A stretch of DNA of 63,983 nt, the filler included, from Reticulomyxa filosa (taxonomy: Eukaryota; Protista; Foraminifera): the NCBI GenBank assembly GCA_000512085.1. It is 26 parts of 26 records of this genome, joined end to end, with 100 filler letters (N's around TTAATTAATTAA, not from the genome) between each part and the next. Parts side by side here need not be neighbours in the genome. Positions count along the whole stretch, not along the records: positions 11,327 to 14,085 come from ASPP01011322.1; 25 more parts are not named here. The stretch is one strand, 5' to 3'. Positions 1,039 through 14,085 of this stretch are shown in pieces. Position numbers and translations under genes: made by a program. The notes under the pieces are model-generated. The model was not told the DNA's origin. It was given only the letters and a program-made list of their open reading frames with translations, and did no database searches. Position 1 is the first letter of the stretch. Each line of letters starts with the position of its first letter.

Positions 1039-4000
1039 GAAAAGAAAAAAGGAAAAAGAAAAAAAGAAAAAAGAAAATAGAAAATGGGAAAAAAAAGAAT
1101 ATTGTAAAGAAAATAATAATGAAAGAAAAAAATAATAAGATTATAATTAAAATTTTATTTTTTAATTTTTTTTTATGTTGGAAAGAATGGTTAGTATCCC
1201 GCTTGAGGATAACAACAGTTAAGTAAATATTTTTTTATTTGTGTTTGTTCAATAAAACATATTTTTAACATTATAGTGTCGGCTCAAAAAAGAACACAAT
1301 TGCCAGTGACAACAGTGGCACCATCAAGACAAATTAATCTGTATATTCGCCGTCGAATAAATGTGGTATCTTCAAATTGACAATTAATGTTATTGACGAA
1401 ACAATTCAAGTCTAGTTATGCATACTCAAATTTTTCAATCGAAAGAAGAAAAGATCAACTAGCTGAAGTGAATTATGAACAAGTAGTTACCTTCTTCTTT
1501 TTTAATTATCCACAATTTATGTGCTATTTCTGCATATATAGATTTCAAACAAAATATGTTGTCCAAGTGAACCATTGGCGATTATTAATAATTTCAGAAC
1601 ATATTTGTTATGTAATATATTCCATATATGACTATGTCTTGGATGAACAGGAACATTCAACGTCTTCTCCTCTGCAGCAGATAATATCGATATTGTTATA
1701 AGCCACATGAACCTTTCAAATAATCAATCTTCAAATCGGTTTCCACAAACAATCAATCAAATACGGCCATCGGCTTATCAGCACGGTTTCCAATTATTGA
1801 TAACATTTGTCAAGTAAATATATCATTCTTCGGGAAAAAGTTTGAACAAGTGCATTTTGAAACGACCAGAAAATAAGTGAATCGAGATCACACTAAGCAA
1901 TCTTGGGATCGGCTCCACAAATTTACAATTGGTATGCGAGAAGAATCCACAATTGCATTGCCTGCTTTAAAGTGTAACCTGTATCACGAGTGATCATCGA
2001 GAATGACAAAGACAGTATCTATATTTGAAGGTATATATTGTTTTTATCACATTTTAATTTGGTGTAATATGTTACTTAAAACAATGTGAGAATGAACCTT
2101 TTCATTGCACAGTAATTTACCTTAGATTTGGAATGAAAGAAAAAGAAAGAAGAAGATAAGAAGAGCAGGAGAAGAAGAACAATAAAAACAAGAACAAAAA
2201 GAAAAAGAAAAAGAATAGCTTAAGGAAAGATGAAAAAAAAAAGCAAAAATATCGGCCAATAGTCTTAGTGATATATGAATCATTTCAAGGAATATAGCAA
2301 ATGGCGATGAGTCTTTCAAGAAGTATCTTATCAATAGAAGAAAGGAGATAATGTTAGTGAAGAGAATCAACACAACAAATCCCGATAATAAGTGATTATT
2401 GATAAATTTATGGAAATGAAATATAAATTACAATGAAATGTTATGTGCTTGCAATCACACAACGACATTCAGATTAGCAATCACTACTTTCATTCAATTC
2501 ACTCCAAATCAACAATGCGCATAATCAATCAAACATCAATAGTCTCCATTTACATATATTTGTGATTATGCTATATGTGGTTCCCCAGATGCCGACGCAC
2601 CAAATACGCATCGAATCATTCCCAAGATACAATTGATATTGATTTGGTGGAAAATATTAAAATCATAGTATACTTCCAGTCAAGTAAAATTACCAGAGAA
2701 TGATTAGCATTATTGCCTCGAATGCATTTGAAAAAATATTGAAGTTAAAAAAACAACACATTATTTTTATCTTTCTAAGCAACTTAAATTAATGTGTTGT
2801 TTGTTGTTTTTATTGTTACAACAACTAGAATATGCTAAGTCCACAGGAGGTAGGTGGTGAAACCAGTGTTGCAAAAATGCGGAAGCAAGTACTGTTGTCT
2901 TGGTGAGAACGGAAGCATCACAAAAATAAAGAAGATTTGACGTGTAAGCGGTATTCAGATAATAGTAATAATATATTGACAACAGCGAACAGTGTTAATG
3001 CAAAGATACATGAAGAGCTTAGGCCTGAAAATAATATCAGTCCATCCACAATATCTGGGATACCATTTACACTCAATCAAACAGATTGGTAGATCTTTTC
3101 CATGGCGACATGAATCAAGAAAGTAATGGTTATCTCATAATGCACAAATTCTCAATACACATCTTATCTTGCAGTAATACCTGAGTTCTCAGAAGTCACT
3201 ATGTTCCACCAAGTACACGAACAGCCATGATAACACAACTCCATTATTCCACGTCGACGCAGTACCTGTTTTACCTCCATTCATGCCAAGTCAAAGCGAC
3301 AGATTAACACATTAAACAATGACCAAATCATTGTATTAAATGTGAGTTAGAACAAGGCCACGAATACCGCCTTCCAATCGACTGCCATTTCTATTGGCTC
3401 CGTTTCGTCGCTATTTTGTCATTGGCACTTGAGGTGACGTTGATGTCATGGTTTAATCTTGGGACCACAGTTATATCAACGTATCTTCTCCTTTCTTTTT
3501 CTTTGCTTCTTGCATTTGCTGCTGCCAAAGATGCCTTCGATTTAGTCTCAAAGATGCGATGATGATACAGTTTGTATCATCAAAGCGTGTTATTGATGCA
3601 CCAGCCGAAGTAAATCAAATGCACTTACCATGGCCTCGGAATGCGCACAAGCAATCCGGAAATGAAAAACAGCATTGCAACAATATACAAAATTGTGCAA
3701 TGTTGTCTGTCCATTTCCTTCGTTGACATGGAGTACTCTGCAACAAGGACATATCGATCCGTCTTTATTTGTTCTTTGTTGTTTAGTCTCATTGTGTGAA
3801 TTGTTGTTAGTACTGTGATCAAATGTGTTGTGCCTGATTGTTGTTGCCTGTTTTTCAATATGATTATATTTTCGATATGTATTTTCTCAGCCATTCTTTA
3901 TTCTCGTCAATATCTGAACCAATTGATTGAAATAAGCAACTCAAATAAGGTTGAATCAATCCTTTCTTGCACTCTTCTCTGTTTCTGCAGTCTAAAGCAT

Positions 4001-10722: not shown

Positions 10723-11383
10723 TTTGATTTATTTATTTTTTTGTTGTATGTGTTTACAATCAAAAAGATCATTACAAATGATCAATGAATTTATTCAATT
10801 AAAAAAGCCAAATACAAAGAAATACATTTTTAATTGCAAATTTTTTTTGTTACCCAGTTTGATAAGAAACAGTCAGGAATCGCTATTGTCCAAAAAATTG
10901 GGAACTATTATTTCATTAATTGCGAAAGAACGCAAAAAATTTATCAAAACCAACTTGAAACAAATCACATAAACCCCTTTTTTTAAAAAAAAGTATAAAA
11001 ATTTTTTTCGAAAAAAGGGTGGAGGTACAAAGACAAATCAGGTGAAAATAAAATAAAATGCTTCAACAGCAAGCAAATGGAGTCATTCAATATTGTATTC
11101 TTTTTTTCATTTTTTACTAACGTGTGCAATTCCGAAATGATACCATCGTTGCCTTGACAGCCTTCTAACAGATCTACATACGTTGCAAAAATATCAGGCA
11201 AAAAATATATAATTGATTCAATCATTNNNNNNNNNNNNNNNNNNNNNNNNNNNNNNNNNNNNNNNNNNNNTTAATTAATTAANNNNNNNNNNNNNNNNNN
11301 NNNNNNNNNNNNNNNNNNNNNNNNNNAAAAAAAAAAAAAAAAAATAATAATAATAATAATAAAATAAAAAACAAAAAACATAC

Positions 11384-13047
11384 CATCGTACGAAGACATC
11401 GAACCGGACGTATCCAACACCAATGAAATACAGGAAGGTCGTTTAATTTTGTGCCACACCTTCACCACTTCGGTCATTATATCAGCAGTCGGGAATGTAA
11501 TGAGGGGAGTGGTCTCAATGTTTTGGGTGGATCGGTGCCATACTTTTTCGTAATGATCGAGTTGCAACAGGTGATGTCAGTGATACCTGAACCTTCGTAA
11601 GGTCGAATTCCATACTGAAGCATTTCCTGCAGCTTGTCTTTTTGACTGGCAAACTCCACAAAGAGACGGGCCGCTTCCACTTGTTCAGAAGTCGCCCAAT
11701 CAGCTTTGTCCAACACACAAAGAGGCTGATCCACCCAAAACGTACCATCGCTTAAGTAAATAAATACCCAAGTGTCGTTCCAATAATACCGCAATTCCGA
11801 TTCAAACTCTTTGTTCCAAAGCGCAACGTTGGATTCATACGTAGCCACAGCGTCCAAGTAGTTGGGTCCGTGATGTTTCATCCTGGCCAATAAATCGGTA
11901 TCAATGCTGCCTTTATAAAAAAAGTAAAGTATTGTTTGTTATTCAAACGCAAGCCATTTTGTAACTAGTTATATACGTTATATAATGTGTTTCTTCTTCC
12001 CAACGTTTGGTTCTTTTCTAAACATCTTACAATGTATACGTTTATAAATATAAACTAGATAAATGTACAAAACCAAAAAAAAAAAAAAAAAAAAAATAAA
12101 GCACACAATAGGTATATAATCAACACACACACACATACATACATACCCAAATGGGTGACACTCTGCTCCACAGCAATAACACGGTCGTTGTATTGAGCTG
12201 CATCGACTTCACTCAAACTCAAACCTTGCTCTGTCGTGGCATTGGTGTGGGCAAAAATGTTATCTATGACTGACAGACGACCGCTATTCGAGCTGTCTGG
12301 ATTACCATGGGCATACTTGAATGCTCCCCATTCGCTGTGCCCGTATAAGCTCCAGCCACTATCGTTTAGTCCCAACAAGCTTATCTGCGCAAATGATATC
12401 GGCTTGTTTGGCCAGCCTAGTGCTTCTGCACGGCTTTTCCACATCGCTAATCCTATATACACGTATACAATTTTATTTTATTTTTTTAGTATACGTCCTA
12501 GCACAATTTACGTTCTCTGATTTTTTTTTTTTTAAGAAAGTTCCACACACCCAGCGGAATATCAGTGACAGCAGTGCATGCGGACGTGTTAGTAATCAAC
12601 TGAACATCATTGTCATCTTGATATTGGGTTACGTATTCCACATTGGAAGAGACCACAATGCTGGTGTTAAACTTTCTTTCAGTAATGATCCGGTGTGGTA
12701 CATGGAAATATTAATCGATTTTCCACTTGAGGTCTTTGGGTTGGAGGCAAGAAATTCTGTCCGCATTGTGTCCATCCATGCTTCCTTTGTATTGCTCGAC
12801 TGAATTATCAGTGTCACTTGGCCGTTGCTCTGCGAACTTGCTTCACTTGATTTTCCGGCTGTTACACCAACTGTCACACCAACAATTATTCCTGCCACAA
12901 CTAACATCACGCAAATCGATATCCATATTGTCTTTGTCGACTTCGGCTCTGTTTTCAATCATTTCACATATTTTTTTTTCTCCTTTGGGAGACGGGTGTT
13001 TACTAAGTACCCGGTGGGGCAGAAGGCTGAGGATATCCTTCTCTCAT
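11384..13047 (-). CDS. Membrane-anchored bacterial-type extracellular solute-binding protein fused to a vWA domain (3' end off contig)
   Basis: Exons 13047-13011, 12948-12551, 12452-12147, 11910-11384 joined by GT-AG introns. N-terminal TM IWISICVMLVVAGIIVGVTVGV. SBP motifs LAMWKSRAEALGWPNKPI, GWSLYGHSEWGAFKYAHGNPDSSNSG, GTFWVDQP, QYGIRP. vWA MIDAS start LVLDTSGSM. Two 1-bp frameshifts in C-runs (~12648, ~11530). Confidence 0.88.
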
Positions 13048-13452
13048 AGCTATTGAATCGACAAGACTTAGTTCTCTAAGAAATGTCACAACAATCGAAA
13101 ACACAAAGAGCTGTTTTTTTGAAAAAACTTAAAGTTGTTATGCAAAAAAAAAAAGGGAAAGTCCTCGTTTGACTTTGTTTTTTTTTGTCGTGGCGTTGTT
13201 AAACTTTCTGTCTTGATATTATAAAACATATGAAACACGCAAAAACAAAAATAGATTGGTTTTCTATCAATTGATTCATAGACATGTTGAGGGCAAACCA
13301 GAATGTTACAATTATTGTGAGAAAGCATTATTTGATTTTTTACATTCTTACAAGTAAAGCATTGAAAAAATATTCAAATACAAACACATAAAAAATATGT
13401 GAAAAACGAGTTTTTTTGTTTCTTTAATGTTTTAGTTTCGCAGTCCCCTATA

Positions 13453-14085
13453 ATGTCAGCATCAAAAACGGGTAGGACAACAACCAGAAAAATTTTCGTA
13501 TGTTATTCAGTCTAATGTTGATATTTGTTGCCATTTTGAAATAGTGACCAAAAGATTGTTAGACAAAACACCTCCGAAAAACGCGTTAGTAAACTCGAAG
13601 TATTTATACAACTTTGGAATTCTAAACGAGAAATCTGGAAAGCATGTTGTATACCAAAGAAAATATTTTTCTGACGCCCAATTTGAGGCTGTGAAAAGGG
13701 ACGGTGCCCCCCTGATATTCTTATTTGGGGACAATGAGCAAGATAAGAAAAGGAAGAGCCATGAATTGAGATACGGAAATGCAGGGCAAGCAAGTGTTGC
13801 TGGAAAAACACAATATGAAAATATTGTATCGTTTGGAATTATCACTGTTTGGTTTACGGTATGTTCGAGCAGAAGTAACGCAAGACAATTGAACACACAC
13901 ACACACAAAAATATTAAGCAACGTTCTGATAAAAAGTTGCTCCGACATTTTTTTAAAAATTTTTTTAAACACAATTTGCACTGTTGGAATTTTCCCCCTT
14001 TCTCCACATTACCACAGACATCCGACATAAGAGTAAAATTGAAGGAATGGGAAACTTCGTTTAGATATTTGCTCGGAAAAATTAA
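13453..14085 (+). CDS. Hypothetical protein with a phage/bacterial-like FGDN...G.xGQA domain (exons 13453-13471, 13545-13858, 14018->14085)
   Basis: ATG 13453. GT-AG introns give the in-frame product MSASKTVTKRLL...APLIFLFGDNEQDKKRKSHELRYGNAGQASVAG...SFGIITVW. The motif resembles the xFGDN...GxGGQA...xGIxT family I recall as DUF7831-like (needs HMM confirmation). Confidence 0.6.

What the first reader, a model, noticed from the sequence alone, without database searches (positions are those of the whole stretch)
11384..13047. Bacterial-type solute-binding + vWA fusion, now intron-containing and membrane-anchored, in a protist
Seen: three complete GT-AG introns that restore the frame plus a fourth donor at 11383, an N-terminal signal anchor, and a MIDAS DTSGS. 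Knowledge: the blocks AMW..AEALGWP..PI, GW..YGH.EWG.FK..H.NP..SNSG, YES.V, GTFW.D.P, YG.RP and W...K.P....LVLD.SGSM are those of the bacterial 'extracellular solute-binding (SBP_bac_11-like) + vWA' proteins I recall from Actinobacteria, Chloroflexi and Cyanobacteria. Inference: a horizontally acquired gene domesticated as a cell-surface ligand-binding or adhesion receptor, since eukaryotes generally lack SBP-dependent importers. The introns rule out simple contamination.
Basis: partly seen in the sequence, partly recalled or inferred. Interest (0 to 1): 0.8.

Follow-up and report, generated by a model that had tools for sequence, protein, structure and literature searches.

The report
Bacterial-origin surface receptor gene in a foraminifer
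This is a real, intron-containing nuclear gene of a Reticulomyxa-like foraminifer for a membrane-anchored protein with a bacterial nutrient-binding domain and an adhesion (vWA) domain. Its family came once from Chloroflexota bacteria and is shared with chytrid fungi and the alga Vitrella, so it is a good but not unique case of gene transfer.

Summary
On the minus strand of 11327-14085 lies a gene with four exons, three GT-AG introns, a fourth donor at 11383, a transmembrane anchor and a DTSGS MIDAS motif. The exons are collinear with intron-free full-length homologues. Two single-base frameshifts (about 12647-12650 and at 11528/11529) are present in the sequence.

The nearest relative is a Reticulomyxa filosa contig. 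It is 81-85% identical in the exons, its introns cannot be aligned, and intron 3 sits at the same place. dN/dS between the two copies is 0.11, so the frameshifts are probably homopolymer assembly errors or very recent damage.

Full-length relatives carry SBP_bac_8/11 plus vWA. An AlphaFold model of the closest full-length relative matches sulfate-, phosphonate- and thiamin-binding proteins (Z 22-24) and a vWA domain (Z 22).

In the phylogeny all eukaryotic members form one clade (UFBoot 100, SH-aLRT 96). These are foraminifera, Vitrella, the chytrids Gonapodya and Nowakowskiella, and environmental sequences. The clade is nested (100/100) among Anaerolineae (Chloroflexota) proteins, which already have the membrane anchor and the conserved cysteine pair.

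Bacterial origin is therefore supported. A private acquisition by this protist and a newly gained anchor are not. Function is inferred only: a surface ligand sensor or adhesin. No RNA or read data were available.

The parts
13011..13047 (-). Exon 1: start codon at 13047 and a short Pro-rich cytosolic tail (MREGYPQPSAPP, plus the first base of the next codon)
   Evidence: Read directly. The tail resembles the tail of P0002 before its TM helix. It depends on intron 1 being spliced.
12949..13010 (-). Intron 1 (62 nt, GTACTT...AG). The least certain intron.
   Evidence: It restores the frame between the ATG and the TM frame. That frame otherwise starts right after a TGA and has no ATG upstream of the TM helix. 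There is no homology or RNA proof.
12551..12948 (-). Exon 2: TM anchor and N-lobe of the solute-binding domain. It contains frameshift 1.
   Evidence: tblastn of P0002 residues 22-121 on 12955-12650, E 2e-16. P0001 matches 12599-12546 in the other frame.
12860..12928 (-). Transmembrane signal anchor (IWISICVMLVVAGIIVGVTVGVT), with Lys residues on the N-terminal side. Predicted type II orientation (N-terminus inside, domains outside).
   Evidence: The homologous helix 27-53 appears in the AF2 model of P0002. The orientation is inferred from the positive-inside rule.
12647..12650 (-). Frameshift 1: the reading frame changes by one base between WS (12655-12650) and SNVEYV (from 12647). The old frame stops at 12631-12629.
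   Evidence: Homologues read WSP(A/Q)N here. This is consistent with one missing C.
12453..12550 (-). Intron 2 (98 nt, GTGTGT...AG, phase 1)
   Evidence: P0002 and P0001 continue across the junction as IP(V/L)G|(V/L)AMW.
12147..12452 (-). Exon 3: core of the binding domain, with AMW, ALGWP and the GH.NP..SNSGRL motif
   Evidence: phmmer against 1.84 billion representatives gave 511 hits at E<=1e-3 and 144 at E<=1e-10. tblastn of P0002 gave E 3e-28.
11911..12146 (-). Intron 3 (236 nt, GTATGT...AG, phase 1), with (ACAT)n and poly-A runs
   Evidence: Homologues read HLG|(K/S)IDTD without a break. There is an intron at the same place in the R. filosa paralogue L001, and the intron sequences cannot be aligned.
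11384..11910 (-). Exon 4: C-lobe of the binding domain (YES.V, DGTFW, HPLC, YGIRP), linker and first strand of the vWA domain. It contains frameshift 2.
   Evidence: tblastn of P0002 gave E 3e-51 and 2e-12. P0007 gave 76-88% identity.
11528..11529 (-). Frameshift 2: one base is missing between GATCC and ACCCAAAA relative to the paralogue
   Evidence: blastn alignment with L001. The frame changes here.
11400..11414 (-). MIDAS motif DTSGS (DxSxS) at the start of the vWA domain
   Evidence: It aligns with the DxSGS of all family members. The rest of the vWA domain lies beyond the end of the piece.
11327..11383 (-). Start of intron 4 (donor GTATGT at 11383-11378), running into the poly-A/T end of the piece. 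The last exon (about 180 codons in the paralogue) is missing.
   Evidence: In L001 the same DTSGSMSSYDG is followed by an intron and a final exon ending ...ALEF-stop.

Best explanation
The piece carries the 5' four-fifths of a nuclear gene of Reticulomyxa filosa or a very close relative.

The protein has four parts:
- a short cytosolic tail;
- one transmembrane anchor;
- a complete class II (cluster D, sulfate/iron/polyamine-type) periplasmic-binding-protein domain;
- a vWA domain with a MIDAS metal site.

The family entered eukaryotes once, from an Anaerolineae-like Chloroflexota bacterium whose protein was already membrane-anchored. Since then it has gained introns, independently in each lineage, and Pro/Tyr-rich cytosolic tails. 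It has also duplicated in R. filosa.

Most likely mode of action (inferred, not shown). The two domains sit outside the cell. The flytrap domain closes on a small, probably anionic solute at the conserved GH.HP..SNSGR helix start. The vWA domain binds a protein or matrix partner through its metal ion. The molecule would thus work as a ligand-gated surface sensor or adhesin, not as the binding subunit of an ABC importer.

The two frameshifts are most likely homopolymer errors of a draft assembly.
For: Gene structure:
- Exons and introns are collinear with intron-free homologues.
- The nearest DNA is R. filosa contig ASPP01007091.1: 81-85% identical in exons, introns unalignable, same place for intron 3, similar G+C (36-37%).
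- dN/dS is 0.106 over 275 codons with dS 0.85.

Domains:
- P0002 scores SBP_bac_8 28.2 bits against a cutoff of 27.
- Gonapodya proteins score SBP_bac_11 27-28 bits against a cutoff of 25.
- Vitrella and bacterial members have SBP plus VWA.
- The AF2 model has pLDDT 88.4 and pTM 0.85.
- VIA-align gives Z 24.0 to 4r6y, 23.7 and 23.4 to sulfate-binding proteins, 23.2 to the thiamin-binding protein, and 21.9 to vWA 4fx5. Foldseek gives E 1e-9 to 1e-10.
- The family profile hits vWA domains of ITIH4, alpha2delta-1 and CLCA1, and hits 1sbp at E 0.002.

Origin:
- At least 600 loci were found in bacterial genomes of many phyla.
- The eukaryote clade has support 100/96 and is one group in 99% of bootstrap trees. 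It is nested at 100/100 with Anaerolineae MAG proteins.
- Named relatives of the sister group are all Chloroflexota.
- The sister group shares the TM helix, both cysteines and the QSANTKE.WM and GHGHP..SNSGRL motifs.
- Eukaryotic status of the others: the Vitrella gene has 18 introns on a 285-kb scaffold, and Nowakowskiella and Gonapodya have 3 and 11 introns.
- There are no ABC transporter genes beside the gene in two Anaerolineae loci.
Against: - No RNA or read data could be obtained: no runs were listed. Splicing and the nature of the frameshifts are therefore unproven.
- The window's own exons do not reach Pfam or NCBIfam thresholds.
- The vWA domain is represented only by its first strand, because the piece ends.
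- Ligand, topology and partner are inferences from fold and motifs.
- The structure was predicted for P0002, not for the window protein.
- Only the best 150 of 511 hits were seen, so the eukaryotic distribution may be wider than found.
- The organism is inferred from the nearest relative, not stated.
Confidence: 0.75

Rival explanations
1. The copy in the window is a pseudogene. The two frameshifts are real, and this paralogue is decaying while another copy does the work.
For: There are two independent single-base frame breaks in about 1.27 kb of coding sequence. R. filosa has many duplicated genes, and foraminifera have a high duplication rate (preprint 10.1101/2023.01.27.525846).
Against: dN/dS against the paralogue is 0.11, so almost all divergence accrued under constraint. 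There are no in-frame stops, no larger deletions, and the splice sites are intact. The paralogue contig has its own single-base indel in a T run. All three indels sit in short homopolymers, as expected of sequencing error in a draft assembly (50,809 contigs, N50 3.6 kb, PMC13746701). That the assembly used 454 reads is from memory and was not checked.
Confidence: 0.25
2. The family is an ancient eukaryotic gene inherited vertically, with very many losses. It was either acquired before the split of Opisthokonta and SAR, or passed from eukaryotes to Anaerolineae.
For: All eukaryotes form one clade. Inside it, fungi (100/86) separate from Vitrella plus foraminifera (96/93), as in the species tree.
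Against: Only a handful of lineages carry it among the listed hits of an exhaustive search. No intron position is shared between R. filosa, Vitrella, Nowakowskiella and Gonapodya. The reverse direction is unlikely, because the family is found in at least 600 bacterial genomes of many phyla and the eukaryotes are a nested twig.
Confidence: 0.2
3. Bacterial contamination of the assembly, or a chance ORF pattern.
For: The family is overwhelmingly bacterial.
Against: Three frame-restoring GT-AG introns lie at junctions verified by homology. G+C is 37%. A second contig of R. filosa carries a diverged copy with the same intron place. The closest proteins are eukaryotic.
Confidence: 0.01
4. It works as a tethered binding protein that hands its solute to a membrane transporter, as SBPs do for ABC, TRAP or TTT systems. 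It would then not be a sensor or adhesin.
For: The complete two-lobed SBP fold is retained. In Nowakowskiella an MFS transporter gene lies about 450 bp downstream on the same strand, and was even merged with it by the annotators.
Against: The fusion is an annotation artefact, because the natural stop after ...ISLEY is skipped. No transporter neighbour is conserved in the bacterial loci examined. The invariant vWA domain has no role in known SBP-dependent transport.
Confidence: 0.15

Closest known systems
Bacterial SBP + vWA fusion proteins (Pfam SBP_bac_11 or SBP_bac_8 followed by VWA; named 'Ca-activated chloride channel family protein' by IMG and 'VWA / substrate-binding domain-containing protein' by NCBI), especially those of Anaerolineae
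   Same: Same domain order, similar length (about 580-630 aa), N-terminal TM helix, the conserved cysteine pair, the AMW / ALGWP / GHGHP..SNSGRL / KIDTDLL / DGTFW / HPLC / DxSGSM motifs, and the C-terminal ...ISxEF end.
   Different: The eukaryotic copies have spliceosomal introns, a longer Pro/Tyr-rich cytosolic tail and low G+C. In foraminifera they also have an extra CC pair (DITCC). No member of either group has a tested function.
R. filosa ETO27713.1 'von Willebrand factor type A' (contig ASPP01007091.1)
   Same: A paralogue: 76-89% protein identity and 81-85% DNA identity in exons, with the same place for intron 3 and the same exon 4 end.
   Different: It lies on a different contig and its introns cannot be aligned. 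Its deposited model is faulty: a frameshifted N-terminus, read-through of intron 3 and a wrong C-terminus. The solute-binding domain is not mentioned in its name.
Sulfate-binding protein Sbp / SubI and the other cluster D binding proteins (1sbp, 5um2, 6ddn, 4r6y, TbpA 2qry, FbpA, PotF)
   Same: The same two-lobed class II fold over the whole chain: Z 22-24, 273-300 residues aligned. There is weak profile similarity to 1sbp, E 0.002.
   Different: Only 10-14% identity. Those proteins are free periplasmic subunits of ABC importers. This one is anchored, fused to vWA and has no importer nearby. The ligand is unknown.
Alpha2delta subunits of voltage-gated calcium channels and CACHD1 (vWA plus bacterial-type Cache sensor domains)
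   Same: A eukaryotic cell-surface, membrane-tethered protein that joins a MIDAS vWA domain to a small-molecule-binding domain of bacterial type. The vWA domains are detectably related (E about 3e-10).
   Different: The sensor domain is Cache/PDC, not a periplasmic-binding-protein fold. The domain order and the anchor differ. The likeness is analogy of design, not membership.
Prokaryote-derived LGT genes of Rhizaria (preprint 10.1101/2023.01.27.525846)
   Same: It fits their general pattern: 69% of such genes in R. filosa have introns, they are enriched among extracellular proteins, and they duplicate often.
   Different: This family was not found in the main text or in the stored parts of the supplements. 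Here the clade also includes fungi and a chromerid.

Membership tests
SBP + vWA fusion family (SBP_bac_8/11 followed by VWA) | Significant match to an SBP-type profile | tested here: inconclusive
   The window exons alone give SBP_bac_8 E 0.017 and 15.3 bits against a cutoff of 27, and nothing else. The closest full-length relatives pass: P0002 28.2/27, P0019 27.9/25, P0035 27.1/25, P0010 55.5/25. The joined protein was not searched.
SBP + vWA fusion family (SBP_bac_8/11 followed by VWA) | Collinear homology with full-length two-domain members | tested here: met
   tblastn of P0002, P0001 and bacterial P0003 covers exons 2, 3 and 4 in order (E down to 3e-51). phmmer of exon 3 gave 144 hits at E<=1e-10.
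SBP + vWA fusion family (SBP_bac_8/11 followed by VWA) | Two-lobed class II periplasmic-binding-protein fold | tested here: met
   Tested on the proxy P0002 (52-57% identical to the window exons). AF2 pLDDT 88.4. Z 24.0 to 4r6y and 23.4 to 1sbp over 284-300 residues.
SBP + vWA fusion family (SBP_bac_8/11 followed by VWA) | vWA domain with a complete MIDAS (DxSxS ... T ... D) | tested here: inconclusive
   Only DTSGS (11414-11400) lies in the piece. In the paralogue L001 the rest is present (SGGTPLF, LTDGVDT) and the gene ends ...ALEF.
Intron-bearing prokaryote-to-eukaryote transferred gene | Eukaryotic sequences nested within a bacterial clade | tested here: met
   The eukaryote clade has support 100/96, inside a 100/100 group with Anaerolineae proteins. 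Other Chloroflexota come next and other phyla are farther. The root is not inferred, but the family's breadth in bacteria makes the direction clear.
Intron-bearing prokaryote-to-eukaryote transferred gene | Spliceosomal introns that are actually removed | not testable with these tools
   The positions are verified by homology, but no RNA run was listed. A Sorites transcriptome protein (MMETSP0191, P0018) shows that the family is expressed in another foraminifer.
Intron-bearing prokaryote-to-eukaryote transferred gene | Recent, lineage-specific acquisition by this organism | tested here: not met
   The same clade holds Sorites, Vitrella, Gonapodya, Nowakowskiella and environmental eukaryotes.
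Substrate-binding subunit of an ABC importer | Encoded beside permease and ATPase genes, and free or lipid-anchored without extra domains | tested here: not met
   There are no ABC genes within 9 kb in two Anaerolineae loci. The vWA domain is fused in all members.
Alpha2delta / CACHD1 family | Cache domains next to the vWA domain | tested here: not met
   There are no Cache hits. The ligand domain has the SBP fold.

The most novel reading that the evidence does not exclude
The eukaryotic clade may be an unrecognised class of cell-surface nutrient or ion receptors. In this class a tethered bacterial flytrap domain senses a small anion, and the vWA domain passes the signal to a partner (a transporter, matrix or prey surface). 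It would have been acquired once from Anaerolineae and then spread between distant eukaryotes (foraminifera, chromerids, chytrids) by eukaryote-to-eukaryote transfer.
Probability: 0.15. Interest if true: 0.7.

Novelty: new member of a known kind. Interest (0 to 1): 0.42.

Why it matters
- It is a clean, checkable case of a bacterial extracellular protein taken into eukaryotic genomes. The donor group is identifiable (Anaerolineae). The membrane anchor came with the gene, and introns were added separately in each lineage.
- Database entries for this family in eukaryotes are named only after the vWA domain, and at least two of them are mis-modelled.
- The patchy clade across Rhizaria, Alveolata and Fungi is a useful test case for ancient transfer with loss against eukaryote-to-eukaryote transfer.
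- The whole family, bacterial and eukaryotic, has no tested function, so a ligand screen would be informative.

Tried and rejected
- Pfam and NCBIfam on single exons gave nothing significant.
- PDB sequence search with exon 3 gave nothing.
- The first scan of bacterial genomes with exon 3 words found no relative. The scan with the family alignment worked.
- Sequencing runs: none was listed. Neither splicing nor the frameshifts could be checked on reads.
- Rfam gave no match. Promoter, terminator and tandem-repeat scans gave nothing beyond low-complexity runs in introns.
- The word-index protein search with the eukaryote alignment returned only 15 proteins and missed the alignment's own fungal members. 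It says nothing about distribution.
- A short intron as an explanation of frameshift 1 (a 26-nt GT..AG candidate) was rejected. It would delete the conserved HTGS block, and it is far shorter than the other introns.
- Shared intron positions with Vitrella and the fungi: none found. The nearest is 5 nt away, which is within chance.
- The MFS fusion in Nowakowskiella was rejected as an annotation artefact.
- The Rhizaria LGT preprint and its stored supplements do not list this gene. Two literature searches for the SBP + vWA architecture found nothing. The R. filosa genome paper is not held.
All searches and trees used single exons by reference, and the structure was predicted for the natural full-length relative P0002.
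Full report
**What is there**

The usable piece (11327-14085, 37% G+C) carries a gene on the minus strand. Its parts, in order of reading:

| Part | Coordinates | Notes |
|---|---|---|
| Exon 1 | 13047-13011 | ATG at 13047; 12 codons plus one base |
| Intron 1 | 13010-12949 | 62 nt, GT..AG |
| Exon 2 | 12948-12551 | |
| Intron 2 | 12550-12453 | 98 nt |
| Exon 3 | 12452-12147 | |
| Intron 3 | 12146-11911 | 236 nt, GTATGT donor, holds (ACAT)n and a poly-A run |
| Exon 4 | 11910-11384 | |
| Donor of intron 4 | 11383 | GTATGT; the piece then ends in a poly-A/T run |

Exon 2 encodes a 23-residue hydrophobic helix (about 12928-12860) preceded by lysines. Exon 4 ends with LVLDTSGSMSSYDG, and the DTSGS lies at 11414-11400.

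**Are the introns real?**

tblastn of an intron-free 628-aa relative (P0002, from a 1,989-bp environmental contig) lies on the piece in strict order, and its residue numbers run on across the junctions:

| P0002 residues | Window coordinates |
|---|---|
| 22-121 | 12955-12650 |
| 155-261 | 12456-12145 |
| 258-395 | 11920-11507 |
| 386-433 | 11528-11385 |

A second relative (P0001) bridges the end of exon 2 and exon 3. Introns 2 and 3 are therefore confirmed by homology, and the donor at 11383 is confirmed by comparison with the paralogue (see below). Intron 1 rests on frame logic only. The transmembrane frame opens just after a TGA and has no ATG upstream of the helix, and the spliced tail resembles that of P0002. 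No RNA evidence could be had, because no sequencing run was listed for this stretch.

**The two frameshifts**

The coding frame changes twice inside exons.
- The first change lies within 12650-12647, between WS and SNVEYV. The old frame stops at 12631-12629.
- The second lies at 11529/11528. There the paralogue reads GATCC-T-ACCCAAAA and the window lacks that one base.

With one base added at each site, all exon lengths and phases fit.

**The paralogue**

The closest known sequence is R. filosa contig ASPP01007091.1 (L001). It encodes ETO27713.1, named 'von Willebrand factor type A'.
- The exons are 81-85% identical in DNA.
- The introns do not align.
- Intron 3 and the end of exon 4 are at the same places.
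- G+C is 36% against 37% for the window.

The window is therefore most likely another contig of R. filosa, or of a very close relative, carrying a paralogue. L001 also shows what is missing from the window: one more exon of about 180 codons. That exon completes the vWA domain (SGGTPLF, LTDGVDT) and ends ...ALEF-stop, which is the family's usual C-terminus.

L001 has its own single-base indel in a T run in exon 3. This explains the garbled start of the deposited protein. That model also reads through intron 3 and has a wrong C-terminus.

**Constraint**

Nei-Gojobori counts over 275 aligned codons of the two copies give dN 0.089, dS 0.85 and dN/dS 0.106. Each in-frame segment was treated apart and the counts were summed. 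Both copies have therefore been under purifying selection for nearly all of their divergence.

All three indels, two in the window and one in L001, sit in short homopolymers. The R. filosa assembly is a highly fragmented draft with 50,809 contigs and an N50 of 3.6 kb (PMC13746701). I therefore favour sequencing error at about 3:1 over recent pseudogenisation, but this cannot be settled without reads.

**What the protein is**

Single exons reach no Pfam or NCBIfam threshold. The best is SBP_bac_8 at E 0.017 on exon 4. A language-model search of exon 3 pointed to SBP_bac_11 at 0.89, which is only a lead.

An exhaustive phmmer search of exon 3 against 1.84 billion representatives gave 511 hits at E<=1e-3 and 144 at E<=1e-10. 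Full-length relatives carry SBP_bac_8 or SBP_bac_11 above the curated cutoffs, followed by VWA/VWA_2/VWA_3.

An AlphaFold2 model was made of P0002, which is 52-57% identical to the window exons, using a 70-sequence alignment. It has pLDDT 88.4 and pTM 0.85, and shows a helix at 27-53, a two-lobed domain at 61-417 and a vWA domain.
- Foldseek and VIA-align match residues 61-417 to whole binding proteins of the sulfate / phosphonate / thiamin / iron / polyamine group:

| Chain | Z |
|---|---|
| 4r6y | 24.0 |
| 5um2 | 23.7 |
| 1sbp | 23.4 |
| 2qry | 23.2 |
| 6ddn | 22.5 |

- The C-terminal part matches a bacterial vWA domain (4fx5, Z 21.9, rmsd 1.8).
- The family profile finds the vWA domains of ITIH4, PTMP1, alpha2delta-1 and CLCA1, and finds 1sbp at E 0.002.

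**Where it came from**

It returned 600 stretches, 599 of them confirmed, in Acidobacteriota, Verrucomicrobiota, Planctomycetota, Pseudomonadota and others.

In trees, the two window exons (kept as separate rows) group with the R. filosa paralogue and then with the following:
- P0002 and P0001 (environmental);
- Sorites sp. (foraminifer, MMETSP0191);
- Vitrella brassicaformis;
- Gonapodya prolifera and Gonapodya sp.;
- two Nowakowskiella proteins;
- four environmental sequences, one of which lies on a contig with split thiolase/SCP2 genes and so is eukaryotic.

The careful IQ-TREE run (LG+C20+F+G4 PMSF, 44 rows, 595 columns) gave these supports:

| Group | UFBoot / SH-aLRT |
|---|---|
| All 15 eukaryotic rows (one group in 99% of bootstrap trees) | 100 / 96 |
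| Eukaryotes plus a set of bacterial proteins including two Anaerolineae MAG proteins | 100 / 100 |
| Foraminifera | 98 / 96 |
| Fungi | 100 / 86 |
| Vitrella + environmental + foraminifera | 96 / 93 |

Other Anaerolineales and Thermoflexales are the next neighbours, and Acidobacteriota-type proteins lie farther out. All named relatives of the sister set are Chloroflexota.

The sister proteins share with the eukaryotic ones:
- an N-terminal transmembrane helix;
- two invariant cysteines (before IP.G.AMW and in HPLC);
- the motifs QSANTKE.WM, GHGHP..SNSGRL and KIDTDLL.

The eukaryotic status of the other members is firm. The Vitrella gene has 18 introns on a 285-kb scaffold among eukaryotic genes. 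Nowakowskiella has 3 introns and Gonapodya has 11. None of their intron positions coincides with those of R. filosa. The nearest is 5 nt away.

**Reading of the history**

There was one transfer from an Anaerolineae-like bacterium into eukaryotes. The anchor and the disulfide-type cysteines came with the gene. Introns were gained separately in each lineage.

The data cannot say which of two routes followed. One is an old transfer followed by many losses, and the inner topology is compatible with that. The other is passage of the gene between eukaryotes.

**How it probably works (inference)**

The lysines before the helix and the cysteine pair suggest a type II orientation, with both domains outside the cell. 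The most conserved block (GH.HP..SNSGR) begins a helix in the model. This arrangement is typical of anion sites in this class of binding proteins, and the nearest structures bind sulfate, phosphonate, thiamin or iron-anion. I could not map it onto ligand-bound structures, because model coordinates are not open to scripts.

In two Anaerolineae loci no ABC transporter genes lie within 9 kb, and the neighbours differ. The ancestral role was thus probably not import through an ABC system. The vWA MIDAS suggests metal-dependent binding of a protein partner.

The design recalls the alpha2delta and CACHD1 proteins (vWA plus a bacterial-type sensor domain). That is analogy, not kinship of the sensor domain.

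I commit to 'ligand-modulated surface sensor or adhesin' at roughly 40%. A tethered binding protein serving a transporter gets about 15%. The rest is unknown.

**Limits**

This is why no profile or structure search was run on the window's own complete protein.
- Only the top 150 of 511 hits were visible.
- The word-index searches were swamped by low-complexity words.
- No reads were available.
- The sequencing technology of the assembly is recalled, not checked.

Noticed in passing
window 13544-13858 (+), possibly continuing after a GTATGT at 13859: An open reading frame of at least 105 codons, divergent from the SBP-vWA gene. It ends at a consensus-like splice donor and runs on to the end of the piece in the mechanical ORF list. 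There was no Pfam hit, and only a low-recognition language-model lead (phage DUF7831, 0.90 with recognition 1874).
   Followed up: partly
L001 (R. filosa ASPP01007091.1) 1-1750: The deposited protein ETO27713.1 is mis-modelled. An extra T in exon 3 shifts the frame and gives a garbled N-terminus. Intron 3 is read through as protein. The C-terminus is wrong: the natural last exon (about 1203-1748) ends ...ALEF-stop.
   Followed up: yes
L090 (Nowakowskiella sp. JADGJK010000027.1) 3164-3611: KAJ3128634.1 (1,091 aa) appears as SBP-vWA fused to an MFS_1 transporter (E 2e-53). The predicted 448-nt intron skips the family's natural end (...VNIATLYQKISLEY-stop). It is therefore probably two adjacent same-strand genes merged by annotation. 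The adjacency to a transporter may still be worth a look.
   Followed up: yes
alignment A2, N-terminal 100-200 columns: Eukaryotic members have Pro/Tyr-rich cytosolic tails before the TM helix. Vitrella has a duplicated APPPYAPEW, and Nowakowskiella has PPY and PPYIPVY. These look like PPxY motifs for WW-domain ubiquitin ligases. The window's tail (YPQPSAPP) has no strict PPxY.
   Followed up: no
L087 and L088/L089 (Anaerolineae metagenome contigs): The bacterial sister genes have no ABC transporter neighbours, and the two loci share no neighbours. One is next to a gamma-glutamyltranspeptidase. The other is next to an unknown 616-aa protein and a CitMHS/ArsB-type anion transporter.
   Followed up: partly
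supplement file 5 of preprint 10.1101/2023.01.27.525846: A different vWA gene (OG0001884, alpha2delta-related vWA plus a PDC/Cache sensor domain) is listed as an LGT from Chloroflexota into the foraminifer coded ElpMar. It is a second Chloroflexota-derived 'vWA plus sensor' surface protein in foraminifera.
   Followed up: no
window 12123-12146 and 13893-13907: Short AC/ACAT microsatellites. The first lies directly at the donor of intron 3. A 26-nt poly-A run (12075-12100) lies inside the same intron.
   Followed up: no
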